64,000 nucleotides of DNA, from NCBI GenBank assembly GCA_002269645.1, contig NIVC01000034.1:62001-126000 (forward strand), given 5' to 3'. The translations under genes were made by a program, and so were the position numbers. Below are positions 1-42,766 of the stretch, one piece after another (the stretch's first letter is position 1; each line of letters begins with the position of its first letter). Under the pieces are notes generated by a model. It was not told the DNA's origin. It saw only the letters and a program-made list of their open reading frames with translations, and did no database searches. Source of the DNA: Macrostomum lignano. Its lineage: Eukaryota.

Positions 1-205
1 TTCCTATCAGGCGTCCAATGTCATCTGGCAGGAGTTCTGTCAGTCTAGTTGCTGAATTTCATAGCGCTTGGGTGTCTGGAGGGACGACAGGATCAGACCC
101 TAGTGCTGGTCAATTGTGTCTTCAGTTTGCATTTAGAGTGAAGGATTCGTTCCATTCTTCTAGTGCCAGCGCGGCAAAACTGGTTCTGCTAAAACGCGTC
201 TCTGG
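1..205 (+). CDS. Cluster A alternative exon A0 (5'-truncated by window edge)
   Basis: Encodes ...LCLQFAFRV...LVLLKRVSG, donor GG|gtagg at 206, phase 2 like the other A exons. Confidence 0.8.
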
Positions 206-3200
206 GTAGGAGTTTTTGCATCATGTTTATTCCCGCTTCTTTAGGCGAGCCTTGCCAAGTTTATTGAATTTGATAGCACACCTGTGGTAGCTGAAATTGT
301 AACCGTTTTTTATGTCTTTTTTTCAAATAAGTTACCCACTGCGTTTCGGTTGACTGCTCCTCAAAATTGCCAAATGTTTGCACATGGAGCGACGGTCAAT
401 TCAATCGAGCTGCCAACTGGAAGGTCGCAATTGACTCCAATAGTCGCTGTGCTTCCTATTGCCTCGTTCCAAATAAGATTAGGTCTCAAGCGATGACGTC
501 ATCACGTAGCTCTTCGGCACAGGCTTACACTGGAAGCTTTCTTAGTGGCTGGATTGTCGCTGAAGAGTCAAGACAGAATCCAATGTGTCTGCAATTCAAT
601 TACAAGTTTGTTCTAGCAGAGCCAGTAATATCCAAGCCTGGATTGCAACTGGCTTTGTTAAAGCGTACATTTGGGTATGTTTTTGGATTAAATTGGAGCA
701 ACGAGTCTTATTAATCAATTTTTAGCTTGATAAAAAATGCATCAAGTTTAATTAGTATATGTAAAGCATCTAGAACTCGTAAATGCCCTCTTATAGCCGT
801 CTCAATTGATTGCTCATCGACCTCGCCTACTTTTTGCACTTGGAGCGATTCACCTTTTAATCGGGCAGCCAATTGGAAGGCCGCAATCGATCCCAGCGTT
901 CGTAGCGGTGGTAGAAGCGCGTCCTATTGCTTGATTCCAAATAGACCAGTAGCTACAGAAGACACTACTCACAGCGGTAGCTTTCTTAGTAATTGGATAA
1001 CCAAAACGAAAGAATCCGGTTCGCCAGAGCAGCAGATGTGTGTTCAGTTTGCGTACAAGTTTATTGGTTCGCCAATGACTAGAATGCATCTGGCTCTGTT
1101 AAAGCGTTCATATGGGTAAGGTCTAAAACCTGTCAGGTAAAAGTGAGCTTTTTACAGTAGAGTTTCTTTGAGCAACGAGTCCTTGTGTATGCTGCTTTTT
1201 CATTTTTGCTATAGGTACGTTTGTACTTGTTTTATTGCGTTATAGTGACATGTCTTGCCTCTTCGATTAATTGCTCGTCCAATTCGCCTATGCTCTGCTC
1301 GTGGAGCGATTATCCATTCAATCGAGCCGCTAATTGGAAGGCAACAATCGATTCTAATAGTCGTTCGTCCTCTTATTGTTTAATTCCTAATGCGGCTTTG
1401 GTGATGCCTATTAATGCAGCGTCTGAACAAGGATTTGCGGCCAGCTTTATTAGCGGTTGGATCGCTGGAAAAAACCAACGCTCGATGTGCTTGCAGTTTG
1501 CGTATAAATTTTTAGTGTCATCTCAATTGCCTGAACGTAGGCAGTCTTCTCTGGCATTATTGAAACGTTCATTTGGGTATGCTTTTATTTCAACTGATGC
1601 GATAAAAAAATGAGTACAAAAAGGTTCTGCTGCCCCCATAGATTAAAAAATTTCGTCAGGAGCGATGCATTGAAAAGCCTTAAAATGCGTCGTATGTTTG
1701 GTCATGAAGCTTTACTCCGGGCCTCTGTGAGACTGTATATTCGGGTGCAACAAAAAACTACTCCGTCTCTTAGAAGTAAAAGTTTTGAGATGGAGCAATG
1801 AGCCTTTATAATGTTAATAGAGTGGAAGTATGATGACGCATGATGCATTTTCTCTGAAAATAATTACTATAGCTACTTCGTCGACACATTTAATTGACTG
1901 CTCATCGAGCTCTCCTATGCTTTGCGCATGGAGCGATGATCCTTACAATCGAGCAGCCAATTGGAAGGTGGCCATCGACCCCAGAACTGGCCACTCGTCC
2001 TACTGCATGATCCCGAATGATCGCGCCGTGTTAGCAGCCACTTCAACACGTCATCAGCAGTTTACTGGCATCTTCCTCAGCAACTGGATTGCTAAGCAAA
2101 ATCTTCAAGCTCAAAGCTCGTCGGCAAGCGAGCATCAGATGTGTCTGCAGTTCTCCTATAGACTAGTTTCAGAATCAGTATCATCTAGTGTACATCTGAC
2201 TCTTCTAAAACGATCTTTTGGGTAGAGTTATAAGTGATTTTTACATTTTTGCATGAGCGTCGTACATAATAGTTCCATGAGTTTAAATGCGAGCCTTGCC
2301 AATACAATAATCAATTAAAGGGTGTAGAATACAAGCCAACTCTAATTCTTTTAAAACAAACACATCCTCACAGAGTCTGTACATGTACATGGCTCTAGAA
2401 TCGATTGCGATTTTTCTAACCAACGCATGTGCCAATATGCCAATGATCCTGCCAACGATCTAGTTGCCTGGCGTTGGACCTCCGTGCAGGTTCCCATGGC
2501 AACGATTCCTACTCGAACAGACGCCGTCTGTCTACTACCAGTAGTAGGCAGTAGAACGCCAGTTGGTCAAGACAGCCTGTCTGGAAAGCTATGGTTTCCA
2601 GGCTGGCTGTCTGCTATTGACCTTGTCAAAGGAGATAGCAGTTCCGCGTCCATGTGCCTAGGGTTCTCTCTGTACTTTACCACAGGAGCTAGTCTTACTC
2701 TATTGAAACGGTCGCGTGGGTATGTTCTTTTACTATGGATCAAGAAGTTTAGAGCGGAAGTGTAAATCTAAATCTTACGTTATTTATTATGTCAGTGATT
2801 TGTAAATAATCGAATCATTATTTAATTTCATTAGTCGCTCTAAGCTTTGGTCTTTAGTTTTTACTGTATCTACATTTGCTTTATTTGCTCAACATTGCGA
2901 ATTAAATTTGTTTGCTTAATTACTTATATAATATTTGATGACCATAGATGTGTACTAACATCATTCGCCTAACTCTAGGAATTAATACTCGTACTTACTG
3001 TAATCTGTGCATTTATTTATAAAAATTTGGCAGCGGGGAAGACTTCAAGGTACCTTGCACCATCGGAGCCTAATTGAAATTTACTTTTTAATTATAATCT
3101 GCCTTTGCTGATTTCCTAAGAGCTAAATAATGTGCGAATTCAAACGGTCTGGTGCAAAGAAATAACGTTAAACGTTTGTTTATTGGCCAATATGCAAGTA

Positions 3201-6200
3201 ATTAACTAATTATCTATGCTCTTTGTAAAGCTTCTTTTTAAATTAGTCATGGTTTTGCGTAAAACTAGGCGTAGTTCATTCTTCCCAACTGCTGATCAAA
3301 CTAGGCGTAGTTCATTCTTCCCAACTGCTGATCAAAAGTAAGAAAAAATGACGGTTTCCAGTACACAGCAGATACCCCCAAATCCTTTTGAAAAAAAGGT
3401 CGTGCATGTCCGGCTCGAAACTCGAAAATGGCTTAGAAGTAAACTCACACTTGTGCAAAAGTGTTACTCTGTGGAAATCTGCTAGCTCGGAAAGCAGTCA
3501 AGCTAATGTTGATGCTACTGAAAGTAGTTCTGCTAGCGGTAGTGGCAGTTGGTCTGGTTGGCGTACAGTTCACGCTAGTATTGTCTCTAGTGCCGACTTC
3601 AAAGTAAGAACTTACACATCTAATGAAGTCTTCTGAAGTGCTGCCCGAAATTATTGTAGTTCAACCCTTTCCAATGTTGCAAAAAGTATTTAGAATCTGT
3701 ATCTTGTCAATTATTTAGGTCCTGCATCTCAGACTCCGAACTGTCAAATGGTCAGAAAGTGATGTCACACCTTTGCAAAAGTGTAGAACTTTGGCGTTCC
3801 AATCAAAAACCAATGCTAAGCAGCTTGTCAAATTGGAATTCAATGCAGCTATCAGTTGGAGTGGAGACAGATTTCAAGGTGATTTTTTTTAAACAAAGAA
3901 TTCTACTTAGCAGAGTACTTAGTAGGTCTTTCCCGCTGTTTGAACTCGAAATTTTCTCTGATTAAACATTTTTTGACACCTGAAGCTACCTCTACCCCAT
4001 TCAGATCTTGCTCGCAGCTTAAAGCAGTTAGGCATGGTGACAAAAAGTTAAGAACATCAAACTGCGACAATTGGGAATTGTGGACATCTGCAGCCGCTAA
4101 TAATGCCCCAGGTGGTAATTGGTTTACCCAAGCTGTTACCATTGAACCAGATACAGATTTCAAGGTTAGACTTAAATCATTAATCCTTTTTATTGTTATC
4201 TTGTTCCCCGCCTGCCAAAGTTCGAGTTTAAGAACATGTTTCTAAAACTTCGATACTACAGTGGATATTTGATATTTCGACAACAAATCCACAAGATCTT
4301 GTACAGTGGCCAGCAATATTAAAATGTCTGGAGCCGAGAAGCGAAAATCTCTCTGCGAAAGTGACGTACTATGGACTAGTGCAGTATCGAACTTGGCTAG
4401 TTGGCGTATAGTGTCTGTAGATTTGCAACAAACTACTGACTTCAAGGTAGAGTACTTGCGCAAATTGCCCTACTTTTAGCTTCCCTGCTGTCAATTTGAG
4501 GACAAGTTTAAATAATGTCTAAATAAGTAGATTTAACTAATTACTAAATCCTTCCAACTCCGCAATATTTATCATAGTTCATGCACAGTGAAAAAGCCAA
4601 AAGAAAGAAAGTTCAGTCTGCACATGTGTCGCAACGAAGATGTATGGACTTCGTCAGCTATTAGGGATAGAGTGACAGCTGCTGGTGAATGGAGAACTAT
4701 TTCGGTTGATCTGAAATCTAATACAGATTTCAAGGTAAACTTTCTTATTGTTCCCTGAGTCTTCCCTCTGCCAAAGCTACTCGTTTTTTCGCAGCTTTAC
4801 TATAAGTGGAAAATTAGTTTTTTGCATTCCCCATAATGAATATAGATCTTGTGTTTCAACGGAAAAGAAAAGAGCCGGTCAGGAAGTGGCGGGACATTAT
4901 TGGTATGAGGCAGTCTAAATTCAATTCTCGATATATACTACTAGAAATTAGTTTTCACTGAGAAATTATTGGTTCAATAATCTATTTCTAGTGAAAATAT
5001 TAAGCTATGGAAAACAGCAGCGCTATATGGACAGCAGTGGACTCCAGTGTCAGTTGACATAGTTACTGGACAAGATTTTAAGGTAAATTATGCATCGTTT
5101 GAAGTCTTCTCCGTGCATGCACTTTTAAAAACGCAGGTCTATGGCGATGATAATCCCAAATAAATAGGGTTGAACCGCTATTTTCGCAGCTCTTGCACAC
5201 AAAAAGTTCGCAAGGAGATGGGCGCCGACTTCAAGTCTGTAGTATGCGATAATCGAGTGGTGTGGAGCTCCGATGCTGCGCTTTATAGCGCCTCTACCCG
5301 CACTTGGTCTAGTGGAGTTGTTAGTTTACCTACTGGGTCCGATTTTAAGGTATCTTCAAAATGACTTTTTCTGGACATTATTGAACTTTTGCCACTAATC
5401 ATATCGGGACCTTGAAGTTTTCCGTTGCAAATAGTTTTCAGGGTAAAAAAACTGACAGAAAGAATAGCTAAATAGAGATTTTGTTACGATTTTACTTAAA
5501 GATCTTGCAGCCAAGAGAGCAGAAGTGTTCATCAACAGTCGGGCAAGGATTCAAGTCGCTTCTGTGCCACAACGAAGTTGTGTGGCGGTCTGTTACTAGC
5601 ATTGAGGCTGAGCAAAGACAAGTTGGTTCCTCGTGGTTGGTGCAGCACGTTTCTTTAGAACCCGGCTCTGATTTTAAGGTACATTATCATTGCGGTATAT
5701 CATGTTTACAGAAATCCATTGGGATGTCTGGGACACCTTGAAGTCTTTCCTGAAAATTTAAATTTTGTGTTGCACCAGAATCTAGTATTTCTACTACTGT
5801 TTTGTCTACTATTTCAACGTCAGATCTTGTAGTCAAGAAAGTACTAGAGTTCGTCAACGATCGGGCAAAGAGATCAAATCCCTGACTTGTCACAATGAGG
5901 TTGCTTGGCGTTCTGATGCCAGTGATATCGGTTCTGTTAGTCATGCTGGGTCTTGGACGCGCCAGAAAGTTAGCATGGAATCTGGATCGGATTTTAAGGT
6001 ATAGCTTATAGCTTATAACTAAATGATTAATGCCTTCTTAAAGTCTTCCCCTGTATTTCTCAAATATTCTGTAGCTTAATCAAAACTAGAGAACTGCACG
6101 ATTTTGTTCTCAACATTAGATTGTGCTCAACTTCTGAGGATAAAGAAAACGATCGTTATACAAGTCCCCATCTGTGCAAGAATAAACGTTCGCTAATAAT

Positions 6201-9200
6201 AATTTCGGTCGCATTTTAAAGTCTAAATCCTGGTGTTTATATTCGGTATCTCTAGATCTTAGGCATCGGTCTGATTTTAAGGTAAATGAAGCTCTTTCTT
6301 GCTGCCAAGCATAGTATAGGATAGTTAAATTGCCGCTTCTGAACAAAGAAAAAAAGTAAATTTTTTATTTCAGGTCTTGTACTCAAGACCATCGTCAGAA
6401 TGAGGGTCTTAAGTATAATTTTGTCACTTGCGGCAATCAAGTAGTATGGAGCGCCGCTCAGCCTAGTGTAGCTCAATGGCAGTACGCTCAGGTTGCATTG
6501 CAGCATTCGCAAGATTTCAAGGTACTTTTCTCACGGTGCTTCCCCGCTGGTATAAATGTGTTAGTTTAAGATTCAACTTTCTAATATTATTGCATTAATT
6601 TTTTAAAACAATGGTTCAGTTCGTGTCTGCAATCTGATCAAGTTCAATCAGATGGCTTGTTCACATCAGTGACATGTAACAATAAGAAATTATGGTTAGC
6701 CGATCAATCTTTAAGTGGCAAATTCAATGGCTGGTCTATTGTCAATGTCGATTTGACTTCTCGTAGGGACTTTAAGGTAAATTACTAGTAATGGGGATTT
6801 GGAATATTTTTGATTGAAGTCTTCCCTAGCAAGAATTATTTCAGTGCTAAAAATTCTCATATTTTATTTTGGCTTTGGCTTTTTAAAATGCCAGATCTTG
6901 TTCCACTTTGGAGGACCGAGAAAATGGTCGATTTATTAGTGCTCACACGTGCAAAAATGAGCGTATCTGGATTGCACCCAACTTAACTGTAAATCCAAAA
7001 GTCTTTAAACGTTGGCAGCTGGCAACTGTGCCGCTCAGTTTTATCCGAAACTCAGATTTTAAGGTGAAAAGTTTTCCCATTAGCTGCCAATTTTATTATC
7101 GAGTTATTCGATTTTTTATTGAGTAGGGTATTAAAAAAAGCAAAATTATTTTTGCACAGTTCATGCACACAAGACCAGCGAGAAACGATGGGTCAATAGT
7201 ATAACTTTACCACTTGTGGAAATCAGGTTATCTGGAAGTCTGTTGACAGCAGTAGCTTGCTTGTCTGGAGGCGTATTCAAATAAGCTTGCAACAGTTAAA
7301 TGATTTCAAGGTTTCTTTTCGGGTTCTTTGGGCTTTTCATCGACTATCAAATAGACTTCCCCGCTGCTTATACTAAATTGTTCAGCTATATGAAACCGTT
7401 CTGCATTGATATCTCTCATGAATTTTTCTGTAATTGAAAAAAAAACAAATTAGTTCGTGCCAGCAGTCGGATCGGGTCAAATCAGACGGTGTTTTCACAT
7501 CGGTTCTGTGCGATAACAAAAAGTTATGGACCACTGGCGTTACAACTGACTACCCTTTGTCAGCTAGAGCAAGTGGTTGGTCTGTTGTGAATGTAGATCT
7601 GTCTTCTAGGGGAGACTTTAAGGTAACAATATTTAAATAATATTCTTTTGAAACTTGCAAAGTACCTTGAAGTGTCTTTTAACTGCCTAATCAACAGTTA
7701 AATCAAGTGTCCAATAAAAATTATGAAAAACATTTTAGCTCATGTAAACAAGCCAATGAAATTGAAAGAAACGAAATTTTCACTTCGATTTTGTGCAAAA
7801 ACAAGCAGCTTTGGTCAACCGCAAATAGTTCATCTGTTCGAACTTGGCTATCTCCTAGTAGCTACAACTGGGACACCATATCAATTTCTATAAATTCCGA
7901 TAGCGATTTTAAGGTATATACGAGCGTAATTAGCTGTCTTCTTTCCACATAATTACAGATGTTTTGGCAAAAATTCAATCAAAATTTGTTAATCGGTTCA
8001 ATATTTAGAGCGTTACATACAAACAAACAAATCTTAGACATTTAGTATATGTGGATGGATGAATGGGTAGATAGTTTAAGTTTAAAAAACGGCTCCTTTA
8101 GCAAGGTATTTTGAATCAGTCTCCGCCATGAAACTCGATAAAATTCAAGAGTTTATCTATCAGAATTGTTTAATTCATTAAGCGTGGCTAATGATCTTAT
8201 TTAGTTCATGCAGCCAATCTGACGTCAATGACAGTGGTAGAACTCGAACTGCCATGCTGTGTCACAGTGATAAACTTTGGATAAGTCATAAAGATGATTC
8301 AAGTAACAGATGGTCTAGCGTGCAAGTTTCTGTTTCCTCGGGAAATGATTTTAAGGTATTAATAGTGACATTGTTAGTTATAGTATTTTTTAAACATGTG
8401 ATCCTCTTAGCATTCAATAAACCCTTTTAGCCAAGATATATCAAGCATTTAAAAGTTTAGGAAACTTTGGCCGTTTTTTCCTTAAATCGGTCGCATGCAT
8501 ACATACATGCAAACTTGCATAGTATAAGCGATCTGACAAATAATCCATATAGGTAAAGTAGATTTTGCTTTCCTTGTGTCTTCATTTTGCTGCCAATTTT
8601 TAAGTGACTCAACTCACAGCGTAAGCTTGTACTAACATTTAAATTATTTCCATCTCAGTTCGTGCCACCAGACTGAGCGTAGCGAGTCTGGCCAGGTGAA
8701 AACATCTGTCACTTGTGACAATGTAAAAATTTGGTCAACACCCGCGACTGCCGCTCTTAAATCTAAGCTAGCTGGGATACACGGAAAATATTCAGTGTGG
8801 AATCCGGCTCAAGTTACCATAACAACATCGGTAGACTTTAAGGTATTTTTGTTGGAAAGATTATTTTCTAGGGTGTCGTTTCTCGCTGCCAGAACGAATT
8901 CTTAGGCACAGCACATTCAAGGAAGTTTTCTTGTCGAAACCAAGAAAAATAGTGAATTTAACTTGTGCGAGAAAGCTTCCTTTAGTTTTGTGCAACGAAA
9001 TGTTACCAGCGCTATTAAATTTTAGCAATACAAACAAACGACGATAATGCAATCTTAAACTTGTAGTTCTTGCCGTACAGTGGAAGCAAAACAGTTTGGT
9101 GGTAGCGGTGTGTTCTGTCAGAATAGCCCTCTGTGGCAGCAATCTTATTCTAGCAGTGTCTCATTGGATGCCAAATGGGCTACAGCTGTTGTTGATGTAC

Positions 9201-11323
9201 AATCGACTTCTGACTTTAAGGTTGTTGATTGTACGGATTATGTATTACTACTGTAATTTTAAGAATCATATAATGCAAATGTAAGATGCAATAGCCAGAT
9301 ATTTTTTAATTTTCTTGGTACTAGAGTAATTTTTTCACTCTTTCTAGACTGGATAATAACATTCCAATACGAAGCGTATCGTCTAAACACTTAGTTATCT
9401 AAATGTTACAGTTATCTCGGTCAACAAGTCAGGTCAGAAAATTACCATTAAGAGTAGATTCATTAAGTCTACACCGACTTAGTAGTATTTATTGACAAAT
9501 ACGAGCGTAGTTGTACGAGTTCTTTGAAAGAACTTGTTTCAAAATGACTCTAGCTTAACATGTCTTTTCAGAAGTCTTGAATGTAGGAAAGCAAAACAAC
9601 CTGAGGAGAGTTTGTCTCGCAGTTGTCTTCGAATTTTAAGCACACTTGAACCTAAAATATACAAATTCCTCAAGTTTGACACGTAACGTTTTTTTTCCCA
9701 ACACCCCTTTATTAGTGCACTTGCTGCCAAAGAAATCTGATAAATTATTTGAGGGTTGGGGATGTAGTTACGGCCCTAAAAGAATTTTGTTTCTTTGTTT
9801 CTAGCTCCTGCGAACGACGCAATGTTGACTTGGAGACTAAAAAAGCTGGCGTATTCTGGTAATACCGGTTGAGTAATATGATAGAACAATAAATAGTTAT
9901 GAGTGCAACAATAAATTATTCATTAATAACTGCAGCAGTTCTTTGCAAACTTATCATCAATTTTAGTTTGTAATAACTTCGATTCTACGATAAATTACTC
10001 ATTATGATTCCTAAAGAAGCGCTAGTTCGATATTATACTGAATTTAATTAGTAAAAGACTTTTAATAAGTTTTCAATATATTAATTTCTAATTTCTAAAA
10101 TTAATGGCACTAAATTATATTTGCTTGGATCTCTGTTAAATTTTCAGTAGTGCTTCAATTAAGTATTGTGATCGATTCATAACCTAGCAATTTAATAGAA
10201 CGGTTATGTGTTTCAAAAAATGCTGTATTGGTTCAAGTTCCGTTTTGTTAGGTTGAGCTACATATATAGTGTCTCTTAGACTAGTGTATCACTTATCAAA
10301 TCGAACCATTGTTACTCAACCGGCATTGCCTGCTCAGTAAATATCCCCGTTACTGCCTGTACAGCCACAGCAAGACCCTGTGGACATCAAAAAGTAATTT
10401 TGGAAGTAGTGCTATTAGAAAATCTTGGAGTCGGCAAGTTATTGATTTAAGAGATGCCTCGGACTTCAAGGTAAATTTAAATATTAGGAAACACTCAAAT
10501 CCTTATGGAACGATAAAAGAGCATAAAACGAAAATGTTAACTTATTTCTTATTTTATTTTTTAGCTCATTTTCGAAGGTACCATTCCGGCCAACAATCCG
10601 AACGCCCGAATTTGCGTTGACAACATCACGGCTTATCATCGACCGTGTCACCGTGAGTTTTTCAGCGGCTTTTTCCTAAGTATCTTTATAAGATAGTTGA
10701 TTAGGTAATGTAGCAGGTACTGATTTGTACTGATGTAATTGATGTTCTATTTCTTAGAAATCGCCGCCTCAGCCTACGAAGCGTCGATGCGTCGCTGGCT
10801 CGAACCAATGGTATTCATCTTCATTGGCGCCCTCGCCTTCGCCCTGATCATCGCCGTGTCCATCTTTGCCATTCGAGTCAACCGTCGTCGCAGCAAGAAA
10901 TTGTCGCCGGGCAGCAGCGAGGACGGCTCTGCTTCGCCGCAGCGACCGAACCGTCAGCAGCATCACCGACGCCAGCAGGAGGCCATGCTGCTGCACGCTG
11001 AACGTCTCGCCGATGGACCTGCTTCGGGTTCAGCCGCCGTCGGCGCTGTGCCGATCGGCCACGGCCACGGGCCCCGGCGCCCGGCTCCGCCAGTCCCGGC
11101 CGAGCAGCCGAGCCTTGACGAGCTGCTTAGCAACGGACATCGAGCTGCTGCTTCTGCTACCGCTCCGGCCGCCGCTGCTGGTCATAACGATCCGCCGCCT
11201 CGCTACGAGGAAGCCATGGGCCTGGTTGCTTCCGCCGCCGCTGGCAGCAGCTCCGCCTCCGACCAGCTGCCGCCGCCGCATCCGCCTCGACTGAATCGCC
11301 GAAACGGCGGTCACGTGGTTTAA
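1..11323 (+). CDS. MAM-domain single-pass transmembrane receptor with two mutually exclusive exon clusters; 5' end lies outside the window. Model: one A exon + one B exon + 10565..10652 + 10758..11323
   Basis: Joined exons rebuild a MAM fold: CDF..C.W (A5 IDCDFSNQRMCQY), S.WI....CL.F.Y, LW....W..V.L...F, LIFEG...ICVDNIT...C. A hydrophobic helix MVFIFIGALAFALIIAVSIFAI, a basic stop-transfer RVNRRRSKK and a PPPRYEEA motif follow. All junctions are GT-AG with compatible phases (1|A|2|B|0|C1|1|C2). Confidence 0.88.
332..674 (+). CDS. Cluster A alternative exon A1
   Basis: ataag|TT ACC CAC TGC ... VDCSSKLPNVCTWSDGQFNRAANWK...LALLKRTFG|gtatgt; 343 nt (3n+1). Confidence 0.85.
797..1115 (+). CDS. 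Cluster A alternative exon A2
   Basis: ttatag|CC GTC ... IDCSSTSPTFCTWSDSPFNRAANWK...LLKRSYG|gtaagg; 319 nt (3n+1). Confidence 0.85.
1246..1576 (+). CDS. Cluster A alternative exon A3
   Basis: ttatag|TG ACA ... INCSSNSPMLCSWSDYPFNRAANWK...LLKRSFG|gtatgc; 331 nt (3n+1). Confidence 0.85.
1873..2221 (+). CDS. Cluster A alternative exon A4
   Basis: ctatag|CT ACT ... IDCSSSSPMLCAWSDDPYNRAANWK...LLKRSFG|gtagag; 349 nt (3n+1). Confidence 0.85.
2374..2719 (+). CDS. Cluster A alternative exon A5 (divergent, closest to the canonical MAM start)
   Basis: tcacag|AG TCT ... IDCDFSNQRMCQY...MCLGFSLYF...LLKRSRG|gtatgt; 346 nt (3n+1). Confidence 0.85.
3026..3053 (+). promoter_or_regulatory. Cluster B candidate docking site TTTGGCAGCGGGGAAGACTTCAAGGTAC
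   Basis: Single copy between A5 and B1. Its reverse complement GTACCTTGAAGTCTTCCCCGCTGCCAAA matches a motif in the intron before nearly every B exon. Confidence 0.82.
3399..3603 (+). CDS. Cluster B alternative exon B1
   Basis: ag|G TCG TGC: SCMSGSKLENG...HLCKSVTLW...W...DFK|gtaaga; 205 nt; purine-rich acceptor. Confidence 0.75.
3719..3878 (+). CDS. Cluster B alternative exon B2
   Basis: SCISDSELSNGQKVMSHLCKSVELW...W...ETDFK|gt; 160 nt. Confidence 0.82.
4005..4164 (+). CDS. Cluster B alternative exon B3
   Basis: SCSQLKAVRHGDKKLRTSNCDNWELW...NW...DTDFK|gt; 160 nt. Confidence 0.82.
4296..4446 (+). CDS. Cluster B alternative exon B4
   Basis: SCTVASNIKMSGAEKRKSLCESDVLWTSAVSNLASWRIVSVDLQQTTDFK|gt; 151 nt; not in the ORF track. 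Confidence 0.82.
4578..4734 (+). CDS. Cluster B alternative exon B5
   Basis: SCTVKKPKERKFSLHMCRNEDVWTSS...EWRTISVDLKSNTDFK|gt; 157 nt. Confidence 0.82.
4846..5082 (+). CDS. Cluster B alternative module B6, split into 4846..4902 + 4992..5082
   Basis: SCVSTEKKRAGQEVAGHY-TG|gtatga...tttctag|T-ENIKLW...QW...GQDFK|gt; the intron interrupts the second Cys codon. Confidence 0.75.
5190..5349 (+). CDS. Cluster B alternative exon B7
   Basis: SCTQKVRKEMGADFKSVVCDNRVVW...TW...GSDFK|gt; 160 nt. Confidence 0.82.
5502..5678 (+). pseudogene. Cluster B exon B8 with an apparent 1-nt deletion (pseudo-exon or assembly indel)
   Basis: Starts SCSQESRSVHQQSGK like B9 but is 177 nt (3n); LCHNEVVW...GSDFK is in another frame. 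Confidence 0.7.
5824..5998 (+). CDS. Cluster B alternative exon B9
   Basis: SCSQESTRVRQRSGKEIKSLTCHNEVAW...SW...GSDFK|gt; 175 nt. Confidence 0.82.
6120..6281 (+). pseudogene. Cluster B exon B10, frameshifted pseudo-exon
   Basis: LCSTSEDKENDRYTSPHLCKNK, then the first conserved Trp is missing; SWCLYSVSLDLRHRSDFK is in another frame; 162 nt (3n). Confidence 0.7.
6374..6521 (+). CDS. Cluster B alternative exon B11
   Basis: SCTQDHRQNEGLKYNFVTCGNQVVWSAAQPSVAQWQYAQVALQHSQDFK|gt; 148 nt. Confidence 0.82.
6620..6776 (+). CDS. Cluster B alternative exon B12
   Basis: SCLQSDQVQSDGLFTSVTCNNKKLW...GWSIVNVDLTSRRDFK|gt; 157 nt. Confidence 0.82.
6895..7063 (+). CDS. Cluster B alternative exon B13
   Basis: SCSTLEDRENGRFISAHTCKNERIW...RW...NSDFK|gt; 169 nt. 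Confidence 0.82.
7160..7310 (+). pseudogene. Cluster B exon B14 with an in-frame stop
   Basis: SCTQDQRETMGQ*YNFTTCGNQVIW...NDFK; TAG at 7197-7199 where paralog B11 has AAG; 151 nt. Confidence 0.72.
7454..7622 (+). CDS. Cluster B alternative exon B15
   Basis: SCQQSDRVKSDGVFTSVLCDNKKLW...GWSVVNVDLSSRGDFK|gt; 169 nt. Confidence 0.82.
7739..7913 (+). CDS. Cluster B alternative exon B16
   Basis: SCKQANEIERNEIFTSILCKNKQLW...NW...DSDFK|gt; 175 nt. Confidence 0.82.
8205..8355 (+). CDS. Cluster B alternative exon B17
   Basis: SCSQSDVNDSGRTRTAMLCHSDKLW...RW...GNDFK|gt; 151 nt. Confidence 0.82.
8659..8842 (+). CDS. Cluster B alternative exon B18
   Basis: SCHQTERSESGQVKTSVTCDNVKIW...VW...SVDFK|gt; 184 nt. 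Confidence 0.82.
9067..9220 (+). CDS. Cluster B alternative exon B19
   Basis: SCRTVEAKQFGGSGVFCQNSPLW...KW...TSDFK|gt; 154 nt. Confidence 0.82.
9805..10470 (+). CDS. Cluster B alternative module B20, split into 9805..9858 + 10365..10470
   Basis: SCERRNVDLETKKAGVF-TG|gtaata...gtacag|C-HSKTLW...SW...ASDFK|gt; intron in the same Cys codon as in B6. Confidence 0.78.
10565..10652 (+). CDS. Constant exon, MAM C-terminus
   Basis: ttag|LIFEGTIPANNPNARICVDNITAYHRPCH-C|gtgagt; phase 0 to 1; single copy. Confidence 0.85.
10758..11323 (+). CDS. Constant terminal exon: transmembrane helix and Pro/Ala-rich tail with PPxY
   Basis: cttag|AA ATC; 22-residue hydrophobic stretch, RRRSKK, PPPRYEEA, stop TAA at 11321-11323. 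Confidence 0.85.
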
Positions 11324-13797: not shown

Positions 13798-16717
13798 ATG
13801 TCTGCCGAAACAGCGGGAGGCTCCAGCGGCGGTGGCAGCAACAATCTGACCGAATACTTGAAGCGCTACACTGAACCTCTGCCAAAGAAAAAGAAACGCC
13901 GCGTCGATAAGGGCGGTGTTAGCAGCGACGATGGTAGTAAAAAACGTGTTAAAAGACGCGACAAGCGATTAAAACCTGTTATCATAGGTGAAGACTTCGA
14001 AGATGAAGTCGATGAAGAAGAGGAGGCTGCAATAGCTCTGGCCAAGCAGCAGTTGGCTGAATCGGCTGCCGGACGTAAGAAATTATTCAAATCCTCCTTT
14101 CAGACTGTTGCTGGTCCAGACGATGATAATGATTCGGAGTCAAGCGGTTGGCAGATACCCAACAGTAATCTTTCTCTACCACGCAAAGGAAACCGAAAAA
14201 ATGGTAGTCAGTTTTCGCAGCACGGACAGCAAAAACCCGATAGCGACTTGTCGTCACCACGTCGAGGGCAAGGGTCACAAGATTCTGACTTGTCACCACC
14301 GCGCCCGGCACAAGGATCAAAAGATAACGACTTGTCGCCATCACGGCGAACACAAAGACGTCGAGATGATGACTTGTCTCCACCACGTCGAAGGCAAAGA
14401 CCTAGAGACACAGACTTGTCGCCACCACGCCGAGGACAAGGACCTCGAGATGATGACTTGTCGCCTCCTCGCCGTAGCCAAAAACCTCAAGATAATGACT
14501 TATCGCCACCTCGTCGAGGTAGACCTCAAGATGACGACTTATCGCCACCAAGACGAGGACAAAAACGTCAAGATAACGATTTATCGCCACCAAGACGAGG
14601 ACAAAGGCGTCAAGATGACGATTTATCGCCCCCAAGACGAGGACAAAGGCGTCAAGATGACGACTTGTCCCCACCTCGTCAAGGTAGACCTCAAGATGAC
14701 GACTTGTCTCCACCAAGACGAGGACAAAGGCGTCAAGATGACGACTTGTCCCCACCTCGTCAAGGTAGACCTCAAGATGACGACTTGTCTCCACCAAGAC
14801 GAGGACAAAGGCGTCAAGATGACGACTTGTCCCCACCTCGTCAAGGTAGACCTCAAGATGACGACTTGTCTCCACCAAGACGAGGACAAAGGCGTCAAAA
14901 TGACGATTTATCGCCACCAAGACGAGGACAAAGACCTCAAGCTAACGAATTGTCGCCACCGCGAAGGCGACCACAGCAGGACGCTGATTCTTCGCCGACC
15001 CGACGTGGAGACCCAGGTCCCAACCAAGCAAAAGGCGCTTTCGACGAAGACAGCGGTAGCGACGCCGAAGCGAACGCTCTATCGGCTCAGGTGCGCCGAC
15101 GGGCTAAACTGACGCACCCGAGCGAGGTGATGCTGGATGAAGATGACGATGAAAAGTTGGGCAGGTGAGTTATCTTGGTCTCTTAAAATACTTATTTAGC
15201 ATGGATTTTTGGGCATAAGCTCATGGCTTTCAGGGGATCTTTAATACTCGTAGCGCATAAATTGGTTTCAAAGTAAAAAACTGAGGTAAACAAACTATCA
15301 GATTAGTGTGGTAAAACGCCACCAGTACACAGTTGCTACCTATAGCCGTAATGAGGCTTCGATGGATTTTTAGTTCATCCTACAGATCTTAAAAGACTGG
15401 ATTACCCATGCTACTCAAAGTAAGGGTGACCCAGCAACTGAGGATTTGGGAGTCTGGCCCAGCAACTGACACTCTGGGAGGCTGGCCCAGCAACTGACAC
15501 TCTGGGAGGCTGGCCCAGCAACTGAGGATTTGGGAGGCTGGCCCAGCAACTGAGGATTTTGGAGGCTGGCCCAGCAACTGACACTCTGGGAGGCTGGCCC
15601 AGCAACTGACACTCTGGGAGGCTGGCCCAGCAACTGACACTCTGGGAGGCTGGCCCAGCAACTGAGGATTTGGGAGGCTGGCCCAGCAACTGAGGATTTT
15701 GGAGGCTGACCATGTTCCTAAGAAATATTTTTCAGTTATAGTGAGTTCAAATTCCTATCAGATTTGCCATAGAAAGGAGGTTGTCAGGAATGAAATTTCA
15801 AAGTTTGCTGGACTACGTACCAAAATTTATGTTTATATAACAAATCCAAAACATTTATTGTACCTTATTAAAGATATCCAGTAAATAGAATTGTCTAGCG
15901 GAAGCCATAGAACTCGTAGCCAACATTGGTTAGCAAAGGCTGTAGTGGTGGCCTTTCTCATTGTCCTTATCAATTAGTTATGCTTTTTATCAGTAGAAAT
16001 GTTTAGCTACAATAATTGCTGAATACTCCTAGCTATAGAAAATGAGCCAATCCGTAACGCCCCACTAGATACGCTACGGCAATTCGTCGCAAGAAGCAGC
16101 CGGATCCCAGAAAGTCAAAAAAGGCCGCCGAGAAGCCAGAACCAACGCCCGAAGAGTTGGCCAAAGCTGAGGAATTAAAAGCCCAATACGCTCGCTGGGG
16201 CTCCGGCTTGGCCCAGGCTGCGGAACGCGAGCAGCGCGCTGTCGAAGCTCAAATTGAGTCGGCTAAGCCTCTAGCTCGAAGTCGCGATGATGCCGATTTA
16301 GACTCGATGCTGCGAGGCCAACTCCGGGTCGACGATCCCATGGCGGAGTTTCTGCGCGACTCGGAGCGTCGCCGAGCCGAGAAGGCGGCTAAGAAAGCGG
16401 CTAAGAAAGCTTTGAAAAAGAAAAATAAGAAAGAAAAAGAGCGAAAGAAGATCAAACGGGAGCCAGGTGAGAAACTCGGCAGGTTAAGTCGATCGGCTTC
16501 GTCCGCATCGCCGTCGCCGTCGCCGCCCCCGCCGCCCAAGCAGCGGCCTCGCTACGACGGCCCGCCCGGGCCGCCCAATCGATTTGGCATCGAGCCCGGC
16601 TACCGCTGGGACGGCGTCGATCGGAGCACCGGCTTTGAGAAGCGCTACTTTGAATCGATTAATCAGCGTAAAGCGCTTAGCCAGGAAGCTTATAAATGGT
16701 CAACTGAAGATATGTAG
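13798..16717 (+). CDS. BUD13: BUD13/CWC26 RES-complex splicing factor, join(13798..15164,16069..16717)
   Basis: N-terminal EYLKRY, about 19 DxDLSPPRR repeats, C-terminal ARYARWGSG-like segment, KPLARSRDDADLD, DDPM and PPNRFGIEPGYRWDGVDRSTGFEKRYF; phase-2 GT-AG intron. Confidence 0.92.
15330..15880. mobile_element. Dispersed repeat carrying a 28-bp minisatellite (ggcccagcaactgacactctgggaggct), copy 1, in the BUD13 intron
   Basis: Array at about 15420-15710; both flanks (cttaaaagactggatt...ctactcaaagt; aaatatttttcagtta...) recur around the copy near 17 kb. Confidence 0.6.
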
Positions 16718-16939: not shown

Positions 16940-17540
16940 TGCTACCTGACTGTACTTAGGCTTTGCTGGATTTTAAGTTCATTCTACACATCTTAAAAGA
17001 CTGGATTGGCCCATCCGCTACCCATGCTACTCAAAGTGAGGGGTGGCCCAGCAACTGATGCCTTGGAAGGTTGGCCCAGCAACTGACACTCAGGGAGGCT
17101 GGCCCAGCAACTGACACTCTGGGAGGCTGGTCAGGCAACTGACACTCTGGGAGGCTGGCCCAGCAACTGAGACTCTGGGAGGCTGGCCCAGCAGCTGACA
17201 CTCTGGGAGGCTGGTCAGGCAACTGACACTCTGGGAGGCTGGCCCAGCAACTGAGCATCTGGGAGGCTGACCCAGAAACTGAGGATCTGGGAGGCTGGCC
17301 CAGCAACTGTTGATTTTGGCGGCTGGCCCTGTTCCTAGGTTTCTGGTTCTGTTCCTCAGGGACTACTTAAACTAGTTTTTGTTGAGTTGTTGCTTTGAAA
17401 TATTTTTCAGTTATTTTGAGAGCAAAATCCTGTCAAATTATGTTATAGGAAGAAGCTTGAAACCAATAAAATTGTCAAATTTTGCTTGACTCTAAGTAAC
17501 AAAAATTATATTTACTTAAAAATTCCTAAACGTTTGAAGG
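16940..17540. mobile_element. Dispersed repeat carrying the 28-bp minisatellite, copy 2
   Basis: Same unit at about 17045-17330 with homologous flanks. Confidence 0.6.
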
Positions 17541-17608: not shown

Positions 17609-18266
17609 GTCAATCCTGACGTTAATCAACATTAGTATAGCATTTCTCATAGCATCTAATCTCACATGAAACTCGTACTTCCACACGCCGCAAACCATGA
17701 AGCACGTAGTCAGATTTAGTTTTAATATATGAGTTGCAAGTAAATAATATTCCAGAGAGATAATATTTCTAAGTATAAGCTGGCTGAGTTCAGTAGCTGC
17801 TCGTCGACTGAGTCGAAGGCTGCTTGACATCCTCAAACAGCTGCCGCAGTGGTATTGGCGATAAGGTGGCGCAACCGTCAGCACCTTTGCTTGGTTGACA
17901 GAATCGTAGCATCAATGGGAAATCTTTAATCAGATCTTTAGTCAATCCTGACGTTAATCAACATTAGTATAGCATTTCTCATAGCATCTAATCTCACATG
18001 AAACTCGTACTTCCACACGCTGCAAACCATGAAGCACGTAGTCAGATTTAGTTTTAATATATGAGTTGCAAGTAAATAATATTCCAGAGAGATAATATTT
18101 CTAAGTATAAGCTGGCTGAGTTCAGTAGCTGCTCGTCGACTGAGTCGAAGGCTGCTTGACATCCTCAAACAGCTGCCGCAGTGGTATTGGCGATAAGGTG
18201 GCGCAACCGTCAGCACCTTTGCTTGGTTGACAGAATCGTAGCATCAATGGGAAATCTTTAATCAGA
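17609..18266. repeat. 326-bp direct tandem duplication (17609..17934 and 17941..18266)
   Basis: Two near-identical copies separated by tcttta; covers the last codons and 3' flank of the TRP-like gene. Confidence 0.9.
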
Positions 18267-26871: not shown

Positions 26872-27059
26872 TGCTTGGAACTTTTAATATATAATTGCCG
26901 TAGTGCGTTTGTAATTGACAAGCGGTGTTTTCCTGTTGTTTTATTACCCTGCTCTCTACCTGATTATAATTTTGCATCGTGTTTGTCAGCGCTAATTAAT
27001 ATCACACGCTTTCATGGATCACCAAATCTGCTGATATCTGGACTGTGAACTGGACCCAC

Positions 27060-29470: not shown

Positions 29471-29694
29471 AAAGTCGTTAATAAGTCTTTAAGACCCCGT
29501 TGGCATTACTGTTACAGAATGCAAGCGAGCAGAGTATAAAATCGTGCTAAATGACTTAGCTAATGTGGCAAATTTTAAGTAGCAATCATATTAGCCTTCA
29601 AAAATTTTCTGTTATATTATCTCTTCGATCTAAAAGCAAAGGTAGTTCAACAGTTCAACAGAGTTTCAGTATCATCTCCATCTGTACGTCAATC

Positions 29695-42245: not shown

Positions 42246-42766
42246 CTACAGAATTCATTCTGACAACAGCTGAAAATTGCAATGTCTGCCGGAAAATTAC
42301 ATTCAGCTCTTTTACTATTACTATTACTTTTACTATTATTTTGATGCAGTAGTTTTCGGTTTCAACTAGGCTTTAGATAAACTCGGGTTTAAATAAGCGA
42401 ACGTCTGCAGTAATGTCTGCCCGAGGCTATAAATAAGTACTTACTCATGACAGCATGGAAAATTCAATTGTAATCTGACCCTAAAATAAAACGGTACTTA
42501 CTTGTCTACTCAGTATTTTCTTTACTAGCCGCGCAGATGTGCAAACTCATAGCCATTTTCAATAGACTGAATATCTCTAGATCTACGAACTTGCCTGTCT
42601 AAGAAAGAGTCTGCAGCTGCACTTTGTGTAATTGTTTAAATGTAGAACTTCGCTTTAGCGAGTACTTACAGAGCGGAAGAGTTCAACGGAAATGTGGGAC
42701 TTGTGCACAAAAAAGGTAATTTGTCAGTTCTTAGGTGGAAAATACAGAGTCTCAGAGACACACTTA

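What the first reader, a model, noticed from the sequence alone, without database searches (positions are those of the whole stretch)
1..11323. Dscam-like combinatorial receptor: one MAM domain assembled from two arrays of mutually exclusive exons (at least 102 isoforms)
Seen: at least 6 paralogous A exons (all phase 1 to 2, length 3n+1) are followed by 20 paralogous B modules (all phase 2 to 0, intact copies 3n+1), then single-copy exons for the MAM C-terminus, TM helix and tail. Joining A to A or B to B always shifts frame, while any A to any B to the constant exon is in frame. The arrays are AAAAAA-BBBB..., not (AB)n, so they cannot encode tandem MAM domains. Known: MAM domains mediate homophilic adhesion and its specificity (RPTPmu, meprin), and large mutually exclusive exon arrays are best known from arthropod Dscam Ig domains. 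Inference: this is a hypervariable self-recognition or immune receptor with at least 6 x 17 intact combinations. I know of no described MAM-based equivalent, but I cannot search the literature here.
Basis: partly seen in the sequence, partly recalled or inferred. Interest (0 to 1): 0.97.

Follow-up and report, generated by a model that had tools for sequence, protein, structure and literature searches.

The report
Flatworm MAM receptor with Dscam-like splicing
A flatworm (Macrostomum lignano) membrane-protein gene builds its single MAM adhesion domain from one of 14 alternative 'A' exons and one of 17 usable 'B' exons, apparently chosen by the same RNA docking-site/selector pairing that insects use for Dscam; schistosomes and tapeworms have the same gene layout, and I found no paper that describes it.

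Summary
The window is Macrostomum lignano contig NIVC01000034.1. Positions 1-11323 are the 3' part of gene BOX15_Mlig029915g2.

- **Exon arrays.** The A array continues 4.7 kb upstream, giving 14 A exons, six of them in the window. There are 20 B modules: 17 intact and 3 broken.
- **Reading frames.** All 238 one-A/one-B splice products give a single ORF of 388-439 aa: signal peptide, MAM domain (Pfam E 2e-10), TM helix and a tail with a PPxY motif. Including two variants or none breaks the frame.
- **Selection mechanism (new).** Each cluster has its own docking site in the intron before it. Every intron before A2-A14 (13/13) and B2-B19 (18/18) carries a complementary selector. Duplex energies are about -31 kcal/mol against -14 to -17 for shuffles, and the pairing is cluster-specific. 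This is the Dscam exon-6 layout.
- **Conservation.** Orthologous loci in Schistosoma japonicum and Hymenolepis diminuta keep the order A array, then B array. Annotated S. mattheei isoforms combine different A and B variants, never more than one of each.

Ten literature searches found no description. The protein's function is inferred, not shown.

The parts
1..205 (+). A9 exon, 3' part (exon starts 152 nt upstream of the window)
   Evidence: ORF with CLQF.F...LLKR motif, donor GG|GTAG
241..260 (+). selector for A10 (TTAGGCGAGCCTTGCCAAGT)
   Evidence: pairs with A docking site, dG -32.7
332..674 (+). A10 exon, 343 nt
693..715 (+). selector for A11
   Evidence: dG -29.4
797..1115 (+). A11 exon, 319 nt
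1169..1187 (+). selector for A12
   Evidence: dG -27.5
1246..1576 (+). A12 exon, 331 nt
1789..1818 (+). selector for A13
   Evidence: dG -31.2
1873..2221 (+). A13 exon, 349 nt
2286..2303 (+). selector for A14 (AATGCGAGCCTTGCCAAT)
   Evidence: dG -30.2
2374..2719 (+). A14 exon, 346 nt, the most divergent A in the window
3027..3059 (+). B-cluster docking site TTGGCAGCGGGGAAGACTTCAAGGTACCTTGCA, a relic 3' end of a B exon (..GSGEDFK|GT)
   Evidence: complementary to a selector in all 18 introns before B2-B19; mean dG -32.6 against -17.4 for shuffles; not complementary to inter-A introns
3399..3603 (+). B1 exon, 205 nt
3604..3646 (+). selector for B2
   Evidence: dG -31.2
3719..3878 (+). B2 exon, 160 nt
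3909..3941 (+). selector for B3
   Evidence: dG -40.8
4005..4164 (+). B3 exon, 160 nt; the B exon used in the annotated transcript P0001
4196..4219 (+). selector for B4
   Evidence: dG -30.3
4296..4446 (+). B4 exon, 151 nt
4459..4495 (+). selector for B5
   Evidence: dG -35.0
4578..4734 (+). B5 exon, 157 nt
4749..4775 (+). selector for B6
   Evidence: dG -33.2
4846..5082 (+). B6 module, split: 4846-4902 + 4992-5082 (148 nt) with an internal intron at 4903-4991
   Evidence: splicing GTATGAG..TTTCTAG restores the second Cys codon (TG|T) and the frame
5090..5117 (+). selector for B7
   Evidence: dG -33.2
5190..5349 (+). B7 exon, 160 nt
5405..5429 (+). selector for B8
   Evidence: dG -33.9
5502..5678 (+). 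B8 module, 177 nt, frameshifted (pseudo-exon or assembly indel)
5724..5774 (+). selector for B9
   Evidence: dG -35.5
5824..5998 (+). B9 exon, 175 nt
6030..6055 (+). selector for B10 (weakest of the 18)
   Evidence: dG -25.4
6120..6281 (+). B10 module, frameshifted, first Cys motif degraded (pseudo-exon)
6286..6309 (+). selector for B11
   Evidence: dG -31.9
6374..6521 (+). B11 exon, 148 nt
6522..6553 (+). selector for B12
   Evidence: dG -30.8
6620..6776 (+). B12 exon, 157 nt
6787..6851 (+). selector for B13
   Evidence: dG -30.4
6895..7063 (+). B13 exon, 169 nt
7068..7091 (+). selector for B14 (second weakest)
   Evidence: dG -26.7
7160..7310 (+). B14 module, 151 nt, in-frame TAG at 7197-7199 (pseudo-exon)
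7320..7369 (+). selector for B15
   Evidence: dG -35.0
7454..7622 (+). B15 exon, 169 nt
7655..7688 (+). selector for B16
   Evidence: dG -36.6
7739..7913 (+). B16 exon, 175 nt
8100..8127 (+). selector for B17
   Evidence: dG -34.7
8205..8355 (+). B17 exon, 151 nt
8550..8597 (+). selector for B18
   Evidence: dG -32.3
8659..8842 (+). B18 exon, 184 nt
8868..8893 (+). selector for B19
   Evidence: dG -30.0
9067..9220 (+). B19 exon, 154 nt
9705..9731 (+). weak selector-like element before B20'
   Evidence: dG -23.7, 74 nt upstream of the 9805 acceptor; weaker than the others
9805..9858 (+). B20' half-exon (SCERRNVDLETKKAGVF + TG of the Cys codon)
   Evidence: acceptor ttgtttctag|, donor TG|GTAATA
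10365..10470 (+). B20'' half-exon; with B20' gives 160 nt (3n+1). An alternative unsplit acceptor at 10338 lacks the first Cys
   Evidence: the split model scores 36.0 bits and the unsplit model 25.3 bits against a profile of the other 16 B exons
10565..10652 (+). constant exon C: MAM C-terminus LIFEGTIPANNPNARICVDNITAYHRPC
   Evidence: the most conserved segment across flatworm orthologues
10758..11323 (+). last coding exon: TM helix (10805-10873), basic stop-transfer, tail with PPPRY (11192-11206), stop TAA at 11321-11323

Best explanation
**The gene.** This is the 3' part of one M. lignano gene for a single-pass membrane protein whose only recognisable extracellular domain is one MAM domain. 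The domain is encoded in three pieces. The N-terminal ~110 residues come from one of 14 tandem A exons. The next ~50 residues come from one of 20 tandem B modules, 17 of them usable. The last ~29 residues come from a constant exon.

**What is shown.**
- The anatomy, splice phases and frames.
- Both docking sites are complementary to a selector in every variable intron of their own cluster.
- One real transcript carries one A and one B.
- The arrays are conserved in parasitic flatworms, whose annotated isoforms combine A and B variants.

**What is inferred.** Each pre-mRNA keeps exactly one A and one B through competing RNA base-pairing of the Dscam exon-6 type. One docking site sits in the intron after exon 1, upstream of the window. 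A second sits in the A14-B1 intron at 3027-3059. Each can pair with only one selector at a time. Selectors lie about 40-100 nt upstream of the acceptor of their variable exon (173 nt for B19). Pairing would loop out the intervening variants and activate the exon just downstream of the paired selector. A1 and B1, which lie in the docking introns, would be the unpaired proximal choices. Mis-spliced products with 0 or 2 variants are frameshifted, carry premature stops and would be removed by nonsense-mediated decay.

The result would be up to 238 receptors with a common framework and different surface loops. The framework is made of the Cys pairs, the Trp residues and the CLxFxY, LLKR and DFK motifs. 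All isoforms share the TM helix and a PPxY-bearing tail. The most likely use is isoform-specific cell-surface recognition.
For: **Anatomy and frames**
- Exon coordinates, phases and splice sites.
- 238 of 238 single-A/single-B products are ORFs. 91 of 91 A+A and 135 of 136 B+B double inclusions give a premature stop more than 50 nt upstream of the last exon junction. Skipping either cluster shifts the frame.
- Pfam MAM E 2.4e-10 to 4.7e-7, above the gathering score.

**Docking sites and selectors**
- The 13-mer GCAACGAGCCTTG occurs perfectly four times on the + strand, all in inter-A introns. It occurs once on the - strand, in the exon1-A1 intron. With up to 3 mismatches there are 20 matches against 8 +/- 3 in shuffles, and 0 of 100 shuffles reach 20.
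- The docking A core against the 13 inter-A introns gives dG -27 to -34 (mean -30.5). Shuffled introns give -13.9, with an sd of the means of 0.7. Against inter-B introns it gives -13.0, which is background.
- The docking B core against the 18 inter-B introns gives -25 to -41 (mean -32.6), against -17.4 for shuffles and -21.1 for inter-A introns.
- Different selectors pair with different, overlapping parts of the docking site.
- Two of the three broken exons have the two weakest selectors.

**Evidence that the exons are used**
- The closest paralogous exons have pS 0.64-0.92 and pN 0.21-0.46. Yet all 14 A and 17 B frames are open and the short selectors are kept.
- P0001 is exon1-A1-B3-C-tail. 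It comes from an annotation built from RNA-seq and transcript assemblies, with no ab initio prediction described (PMC5730564).

**Other flatworms**
- S. japonicum has at least 14 A then at least 15 B segments. H. diminuta has A segments followed by 32 B-type donors, at least 26 of which match the B profile.
- Twenty-one S. mattheei isoforms share the signal peptide and constant part. They use at least 4 A and at least 13 B variants, one B and at most one A each. The same A occurs with 6 different B, and the same B with at least 2 different A.
- The Dicrocoelium pair and the H. diminuta pair each differ only in the B segment, apart from two substitutions in the A segment of the Dicrocoelium pair.
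Against: - No read-level RNA data were available, so only one M. lignano isoform (A1+B3) is documented. Use of the other 13 A and 16 B variants in this species is inferred.
- How the isoform models of the parasite genomes were produced was not checked.
- The 3' half of the B docking site resembles the 3' end and 5' splice site of every B exon. Some B selectors could therefore pair locally with a neighbouring donor instead.
- A1 and B1 have no selector. The B20 selector is weak (dG -23.7).
- Simple k-mer and duplex scans found no clear docking/selector signal in S. japonicum or H. diminuta.
- The structure prediction was uninformative (pLDDT 43), so the placement of variable residues on surface loops is argued from the alignment only.
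- Nothing here bears on binding specificity, expression pattern or function.
Confidence: 0.85

Rival explanations
1. Fossil duplicates. The gene constitutively uses one A and one B (A1 and B3, as annotated). The other copies would be unused relics of tandem exon duplication.
For: Only one M. lignano transcript is annotated. Three B modules are demonstrably broken.
Against: Synonymous sites between even the closest copies are saturated while non-synonymous change is constrained. Despite that, 14 of 14 A and 17 of 20 B frames, their splice sites and their framework residues are intact. Every variant keeps a selector complementary to a single docking site. Orthologues in other flatworms keep the arrays and have annotated isoforms that use many different variants.
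Confidence: 0.04
2. Exclusivity without RNA pairing. Variants would be chosen by splice-site competition or protein regulators, and only frame incompatibility plus nonsense-mediated decay would enforce one-of-each. The conserved intron motifs would be protein-binding sites or duplication remnants.
For: All variant lengths are 3n+1, so decay alone could clean up errors. Both docking sites begin with the same TTTGGCA, which could be a protein site. No selector signal was recovered in two other species.
Against: A motif copied by duplication explains same-strand copies. It does not explain a single reverse-complement copy placed in the intron before each cluster. Pairing is cluster-specific and about 20 sd beyond shuffles. 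Selectors differ in register yet always stay complementary to the docking site.
Confidence: 0.1
3. For the B cluster only: the intronic elements pair locally with the conserved 3' end and 5' splice site of an adjacent B exon (GAYTTYAAG|GTA) and mask that donor. They would not pair with the distant site at 3027-3059.
For: The 3' half of the docking site (GAAGACTTCAAGGTACC) is itself a relic B-exon end. Several selectors contain TTGAAGTC, the complement of B-exon ends.
Against: Many selectors (before B4, B5, B11, B12, B14, B15, B18, B19) pair mainly with the 5' half, TTGGCAGCGGGGAAG. The retained peptide end of B exons (..DFK) does not extend into that half, though its absence from B-exon sequence was not checked at DNA level. 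The A cluster has the same architecture with no resemblance between its docking site and A-exon ends.
Confidence: 0.12
4. Protocadherin- or sDscam-like promoter choice. Each A exon would have its own promoter and leader and be spliced to the downstream exons.
For: Tandem variable 5' exons followed by constant exons resemble clustered protocadherins.
Against: All A exons start at a phase-1 acceptor, and no ATG-plus-signal-peptide ORF precedes any of them. One upstream exon encodes the signal peptide and ends in phase 1. S. mattheei isoforms with different A exons share one signal peptide. The B array is internal and cannot be chosen by a promoter.
Confidence: 0.02

Closest known systems
Arthropod Dscam1 variable exon clusters, especially exon 6 with its docking site and selector sequences (Graveley 2005, from my own knowledge; reviewed in PMC4691838, PMC8791459, PMC6071210, seen here only as search-result titles and abstracts)
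   Same: Several tandem clusters of mutually exclusive exons, each encoding part of one extracellular domain of a single-pass receptor. Clusters are chosen independently and combine. One docking site sits in the intron after the preceding exon, and one selector sits upstream of each variant. Selectors overlap on the docking site.
   Different: The variable domain is MAM, not half-Ig. There is no sequence or domain relationship to Dscam: Pfam finds only MAM. The phylum is Platyhelminthes, not Arthropoda. The repertoire is 238 isoforms, not tens of thousands. Both clusters use the upstream-docking layout. The B docking site is visibly a relic exon end. Isoform-specific homophilic binding is unproven.
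Clustered protocadherins (vertebrates) and chelicerate sDscam (PMC9258826)
   Same: Tens to hundreds of cell-surface isoforms from tandem variable exons joined to constant exons that encode a shared tail. The repertoire size is similar.
   Different: Those systems use promoter choice of whole 5' variable exons. Here the variable exons are internal, there are two arrays, and RNA pairing signatures are present.
MAM-domain adhesion proteins (RPTPmu/kappa, meprin, neuropilin, MDGA)
   Same: A MAM domain next to a TM segment. In RPTPmu/kappa the MAM domain contributes to homophilic specificity (Zondag 1995, reference cited in PMC9258826).
   Different: Those are invariant multi-domain proteins. Here MAM is the only detected ectodomain and it is hypervariable. 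The domain is divergent (about 30-41 bits) and has an extra Cys pair inside the B segment.
Small docking/selector clusters of mutually exclusive exons (14-3-3zeta, Mhc, MRP1, srp in insects; ATE1 in mammals, PMC7797038)
   Same: Competing RNA structures select one exon.
   Different: From my own knowledge, those clusters hold roughly 2-8 exons in housekeeping or structural genes. None is a two-cluster hypervariable receptor.
Known flatworm variation systems (schistosome micro-exon genes, SmPoMuc mucins; from my own knowledge)
   Same: Splicing-based protein variation in flatworms.
   Different: Those are secreted products, varied by cassette micro-exon skipping or recombination. They do not use mutually exclusive arrays inside a folded domain.

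Membership tests
MAM domain (Pfam PF00629) | Profile match above the curated gathering score over most of the domain | tested here: met
   Three spliced A+B+C products score 30.2, 38.1 and 40.9 bits against a cut-off of 26.4. Two of them match profile positions 7-158 of 158 in one stretch; the third matches in two stretches. P0001 carries a precomputed PF00629 hit.
MAM domain (Pfam PF00629) | Beta-sandwich fold | tested here: inconclusive
   The AlphaFold2 model of P0001 has mean pLDDT 43. There is no PDB sequence hit.
Cluster of mutually exclusive spliced exons (criteria of PMC3228551, as given in its title: similar length, same splice phases and frame, sequence homology) | Tandem homologous exons with identical phases and similar length | tested here: met
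   The A exons are 310-391 nt and all phase 1 to 2. The B modules are 148-205 nt and all phase 2 to 0. Mean pairwise identity is 31% with a conserved framework.
Cluster of mutually exclusive spliced exons | Transcripts contain exactly one exon per cluster | tested here: inconclusive
   In M. lignano one RNA-based model has one A and one B. In S. mattheei, 21 annotated isoforms each have one B and at most one A. No read-level data could be examined.
Dscam exon-6-type docking/selector control | A single docking site in the intron flanking the cluster | tested here: met
   The A site is at L001 10146-10168 in the exon1-A1 intron. The B site is at window 3027-3059 in the A14-B1 intron.
Dscam exon-6-type docking/selector control | A selector complementary to the docking site upstream of each variant, all overlapping on the docking site | tested here: met
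   13 of 13 introns before A2-A14 and 18 of 18 before B2-B19 carry one. The signal is cluster-specific and more than 20 sd from shuffles. A1 and B1 have none, and the B20 selector is weak.
Dscam exon-6-type docking/selector control | Pairing is required for exon inclusion (mutations and compensatory mutations) | not testable with these tools
   This needs minigenes or genome editing.
Dscam exon-6-type docking/selector control | Docking and selector elements conserved in related species | tested here: inconclusive
   k-mer and duplex scans in S. japonicum (L002) and H. diminuta (L003) gave only low-complexity signals. The exon1-A1 intron of those loci was not in the fetched DNA.
Dscam / IgSF gene family (homology) | Ig and FNIII domains | tested here: not met
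   Pfam finds only MAM in the ectodomain. An exhaustive HMMER search returns only MAM proteins. The gene works like Dscam but is not a Dscam.
Clustered-protocadherin-type variable exons | Each variable exon has its own promoter, start codon and signal peptide | tested here: not met
   The A exons have phase-1 acceptors, and one shared signal-peptide exon lies upstream.

The most novel reading that the evidence does not exclude
Flatworms, from free-living Macrostomum to schistosomes, flukes, monogeneans and tapeworms, would possess their own cell-identity code. It would be a MAM-domain receptor whose A x B isoforms bind in an isoform-specific, probably homophilic, way and are expressed stochastically per cell. 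It would play the role that Dscam1 plays in arthropods and clustered protocadherins play in vertebrates, for example in neurite self-avoidance or tissue/self recognition. It would be controlled by an independently evolved docking/selector RNA switch. That would be a third independent invention of the molecular-barcode principle, and the first in Lophotrochozoa.
Probability: 0.3. Interest if true: 0.95.

Novelty: new variant of a known kind. Interest (0 to 1): 0.88.

Why it matters
**A new instance outside arthropods.** Large docking/selector-controlled arrays of mutually exclusive exons that diversify a surface receptor are textbook knowledge only for pancrustacean Dscam1. This gene has the same logic but is built on a different fold (MAM), sits in a different superphylum, and apparently dates back at least to the last common ancestor of Macrostomum and the parasitic flatworms. 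It would show that this solution to making many receptors from one gene is convergent rather than an arthropod oddity.

**A tractable test system.** The two clusters are compact (introns of 92-340 nt) and M. lignano has working transgenesis (PMC5730564). That makes it a good system for testing how RNA pairing selects exons. The B docking site is visibly a relic exon end, which fits the duplication model for the origin of competing structures (PMC6071210, abstract only).

**Consequences for annotation and parasitology.** The gene is present in schistosomes, liver flukes and tapeworms, so a variable surface protein of medically important parasites has gone unremarked. Several public gene models for it are wrong: arrays are split into separate genes, or several B exons are fused into one product.

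Tried and rejected
**Searches that gave nothing usable**
- A protein search with the 120-aa constant region returned nothing, not even P0001. This is a limit of the word index.
- P0004 could not be located on a contig. One cluster look-up timed out.
- A PDB sequence search gave no MAM hit.

**Structure**
- AlphaFold2 on P0001 with 10 sequences gave pLDDT 43, so no fold search was run.

**RNA pairing**
- RNAduplex on whole long introns was uninformative because it allows huge loops, and it timed out. One script was lost. I replaced these with short docking cores plus shuffled and cross-cluster controls.
- Looking for selectors and docking sites in S. japonicum inter-A introns and H. diminuta inter-B introns gave only AT-rich or polypyrimidine signals. 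This is inconclusive, not negative.

**Alternatives considered and rejected**
- Tandem MAM domains: there is no (AB)n order, and A-A and B-B joins shift the frame.
- Promoter choice: the A exons have phase-1 acceptors and share one signal-peptide exon.
- Steric exclusion by very short introns: all inter-variant introns are at least 92 nt.
- Chance ORFs: profile hits occur only in the array, on one strand.

**Literature**
- Ten full-text searches found no description of this gene or of docking/selector control in flatworms. Terms included MAM with mutually exclusive, Macrostomum, Schistosoma, flatworm and Platyhelminthes with Dscam, docking site/selector, and the locus name.

Full report
**Identity of the window**

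A spliced test product from the window retrieved one close protein, BOX15_Mlig029915g2 of Macrostomum lignano (P0001, 422 aa). Its locus on contig NIVC01000034.1 (assembly GCA_002269645.1, Mlig_3_7) was fetched as L001. L001 is identical to the window over the whole 21,323-nt overlap, and window position 1 equals L001 14684. The gene spans L001 10001-26006, so the window holds its last 11.3 kb and the first 4.7 kb lie upstream.

**Checking the observation**

Six donors of the form AARCGNNNNNNNGG|GTA mark A-type exons, and twenty-one sites GAYTTYAAR|GT mark B-type ends.

- For each complete A exon in the window there is a pyrimidine-rich AG acceptor in the open frame that gives a 3n+1 length.
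- Most B modules begin at AG|NTCNTGY and are 3n+1 long. The rest were resolved by hand.
- B7 and B16 have ordinary acceptors.
- B6 needs an extra GT..AG intron (4903-4991). Removing it recreates the conserved second Cys codon.
- B8 and B10 are frameshifted, and B14 has an in-frame TAG.
- B20 fits the family best as a split module, 9805-9858 plus 10365-10470. This gives 160 nt and 36.0 bits, against 25.3 bits for the unsplit version, scored with a profile of the other 16 B exons.

Profiles of the A and B peptides hit nothing else in the 64-kb window on either strand. The constant exon 10565-10652 and the last exon 10758-11323 complete the ORF. Spliced A+B+C products match Pfam MAM above the gathering score. 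Two of the three products match over profile positions 7-158 of 158 in one stretch.

**The whole gene**

Upstream of the window, L001 holds a 70-nt first exon (signal peptide, ending in phase 1) and eight more complete A exons plus the start of the ninth. That makes 14 A exons in all. A2 lacks the N-terminal Cys pair.

All introns are GT..AG, and those between variants measure 92-340 nt. All 14 x 17 = 238 one-A/one-B combinations give a single ORF of 388-439 aa. All 91 A+A and 135 of 136 B+B double inclusions create a stop more than 50 nt upstream of the last exon junction. Skipping either cluster shifts the frame.

The variants share on average only 31% amino-acid identity, but they keep a fixed framework: the Cys pairs, the Trp residues, and the CLxFxY, LxLLKR..G, SC..C..LW and DFK motifs. 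Between the closest paralogues synonymous sites are saturated (pS 0.64-0.92) while pN is 0.21-0.46. The copies are therefore old and have been kept as coding sequence.

**How one exon is chosen: the new result**

The introns between A exons share one conserved element, GCAACGAGCCTTG. Shared k-mers there exceed every shuffle. In L001 this 13-mer occurs perfectly four times on the + strand, always in inter-A introns. It occurs once on the - strand, 80 nt into the intron that follows exon 1. None of 100 shuffles reaches the observed number of near-matches.

Folding the docking region against each intron shows a selector before every one of A2-A14. Different selectors use different, overlapping parts of TTTGGCAAGGCTCGTTGCTCCAT.

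The same analysis of the B cluster shows that the 'B fragment' at 3041-3049 is the core of a second docking site, TTGGCAGCGGGGAAGACTTCAAGGTACCTTGCA (3027-3059). It has a selector in all 18 introns before B2-B19.

| Docking core | Against inter-A introns (13) | Against inter-B introns (18) | Shuffled introns of its own cluster |
|---|---|---|---|
| A | mean -30.5 (range -27 to -34) | -13.0 | -13.9 (sd of means 0.7) |
| B | -21.1 | mean -32.6 (range -25 to -41) | -17.4 (sd of means 0.65) |

Values are duplex free energies in kcal/mol. Each docking site pairs only with the introns of its own cluster.

A further detail fits the model. Two of the three broken B exons have the two weakest selectors. 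A1 and B1 lie in the docking introns and have no selector. B20 has only a weak one, at 9705-9731.

This is the arrangement described for the Dscam exon 6 cluster: the docking site follows the preceding exon, and a selector lies upstream of each variant. I infer that it works the same way. Only one selector can occupy the docking site, the loop brings the chosen acceptor to the upstream donor, and frameshift plus nonsense-mediated decay removes errors. The pairing is computed, not demonstrated.

The reading frame through the B docking site ends ..GSGEDFK|GT. It looks like the remnant of a former first B exon. That fits the duplication model for the origin of competing structures (PMC6071210, abstract only).

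**RNA evidence**

The Mlig_3_7 annotation was built from RNA-seq and a de novo transcriptome with StringTie, TACO and TBONE. ORFs were called with TransDecoder, and no ab initio gene prediction is described (PMC5730564). P0001 therefore reflects real RNA. It joins exon 1, A1, B3, C and the last exon, skipping 13 A and 19 B modules. No other M. lignano isoform is in the databases I could search.

**Other flatworms**

An exhaustive HMMER search of 1.8 billion representative proteins found only 24 hits. The best share the constant exon (LILEGTIPAGYPDARICVDNITSYTEPC), a TM helix, a PPPGYDEAIGL motif and a conserved C-terminus. They come from Schistosoma, Heterobilharzia, Trichobilharzia, Dicrocoelium, Opisthorchis, Clonorchis, Hymenolepis, Mesocestoides, Cichlidogyrus and Protopolystoma.

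- **S. japonicum locus (L002).** It carries at least 14 A-type then at least 15 B-type segments on one strand.
- **H. diminuta locus (L003).** It carries A-type segments followed by 32 B-type donors, at least 26 of which match the B profile.
- **S. mattheei isoforms.** Twenty-one annotated isoforms on one chromosome share the signal peptide and constant part. They combine at least 4 A with at least 13 B variants, always one B and at most one A. The same A occurs with six different B, and the same B with at least two different A.
- **Isoform pairs.** Two Dicrocoelium proteins and two H. diminuta proteins each differ only in the B segment, apart from two substitutions in the A segment of the Dicrocoelium pair.

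I did not verify how those annotations were produced. I could not detect docking or selector elements in L002 or L003 with simple scans.

**Comparison with what is known, and novelty**

The gene works like Dscam1 but is not a Dscam, because Pfam finds no Ig or FNIII domains. It is not protocadherin-like either, because the A exons are internal phase-1 exons behind a shared signal-peptide exon.

Ten full-text searches found nothing on MAM-based exon arrays, on this locus, or on docking/selector control in flatworms. I therefore rate it a new variant of a known kind. The absence of a paper in the searchable library is not proof that none exists.

**What is not known**

- The function.
- The binding specificity.
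- The expression pattern.
- Whether exon choice is stochastic.

The self-recognition reading rests only on analogy with Dscam and on the role of MAM in RPTPmu homophilic binding. The structure model was too poor to place the variable residues.

Noticed in passing
window 4903-4991 and 9859-10364; L003 (H. diminuta) e.g. 5986-6179, 17630-17822: Two M. lignano B modules (B6, B20) are split by an intron inside the second Cys codon (TG|gt...ag|Y). At least 10 of the 32 H. diminuta B modules have an upstream micro-exon that ends at the same point (TG of the Cys codon), followed by a short intron. Where the split holds, the alternative unit is a two-exon cassette. I did not resolve whether the intron is ancestral or gained in parallel.
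   Followed up: partly
window 3020-3035 and L001 10140-10155: Both docking sites begin with the same sequence, A(T)TTTGGCA, and many selectors of both clusters end in TGCCAA(A/T/G). This could be a shared protein-binding site or a common origin.
   Followed up: no
window 5502-5678, 6120-6281, 7160-7310: Three B modules are broken: one has a 1-nt frameshift, one a frameshift plus decay, and one a single TAG. The single-base defects in B8 and B14 could be errors or strain variants in this long-read assembly rather than true pseudo-exons.
   Followed up: no
L002 1-7634; P0030 (H. diminuta); P0011 (Cichlidogyrus): Public gene models mishandle the arrays. In S. japonicum, part of the A array is annotated as two separate 'MAM (faint)' genes. 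An old H. diminuta model and a Cichlidogyrus model fuse several B exons into one protein.
   Followed up: partly
window 3262-3336: A perfect 36-nt tandem duplication (2.1 copies) lies in the A14-B1 intron, between the B docking site and B1.
   Followed up: no
window 13798-16717 (+): The next gene downstream is a Bud13 (RES complex splicing factor) homologue (Pfam E 2e-32). Its N-terminal part carries a long 42/81-nt repeat that encodes DLSPPRRGQ-type units.
   Followed up: partly
window 15423-15708 and 17044-17309; 17609-18266: Two arrays of the same 28-nt minisatellite lie about 1.3 kb apart around the Bud13 3' exon. Further along there is a 332-nt unit repeated twice at 99% identity.
   Followed up: no
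window 25969-27812 and 28681-29472: Strongly strand-asymmetric C-rich tandem repeats (16-nt, 44-nt and 28-nt units) give a GC skew of -0.66.
   Followed up: no
window 40138-42282 (-) and 54111-56924 (+): Two paralogous dynamin-like/URGCP-like GTPase genes lie in divergent orientation. They share peptide stretches such as GEQYVLLLDAIDKLKLGSEIDLPEIVVLGDQSEGKSTVLEAIA.
   Followed up: partly
window 58902-64000: More than 5 kb of a 23-nt satellite (TTTAATGTTTGACATGGTGGCTC, over 170 copies) runs to the end of the window.
   Followed up: no
window 20596-23125 (+), 33187-33951 (-): Other neighbours are a SIR2-family deacetylase and a CRAL/TRIO-domain protein. Nothing links them to the MAM gene.
   Followed up: partly
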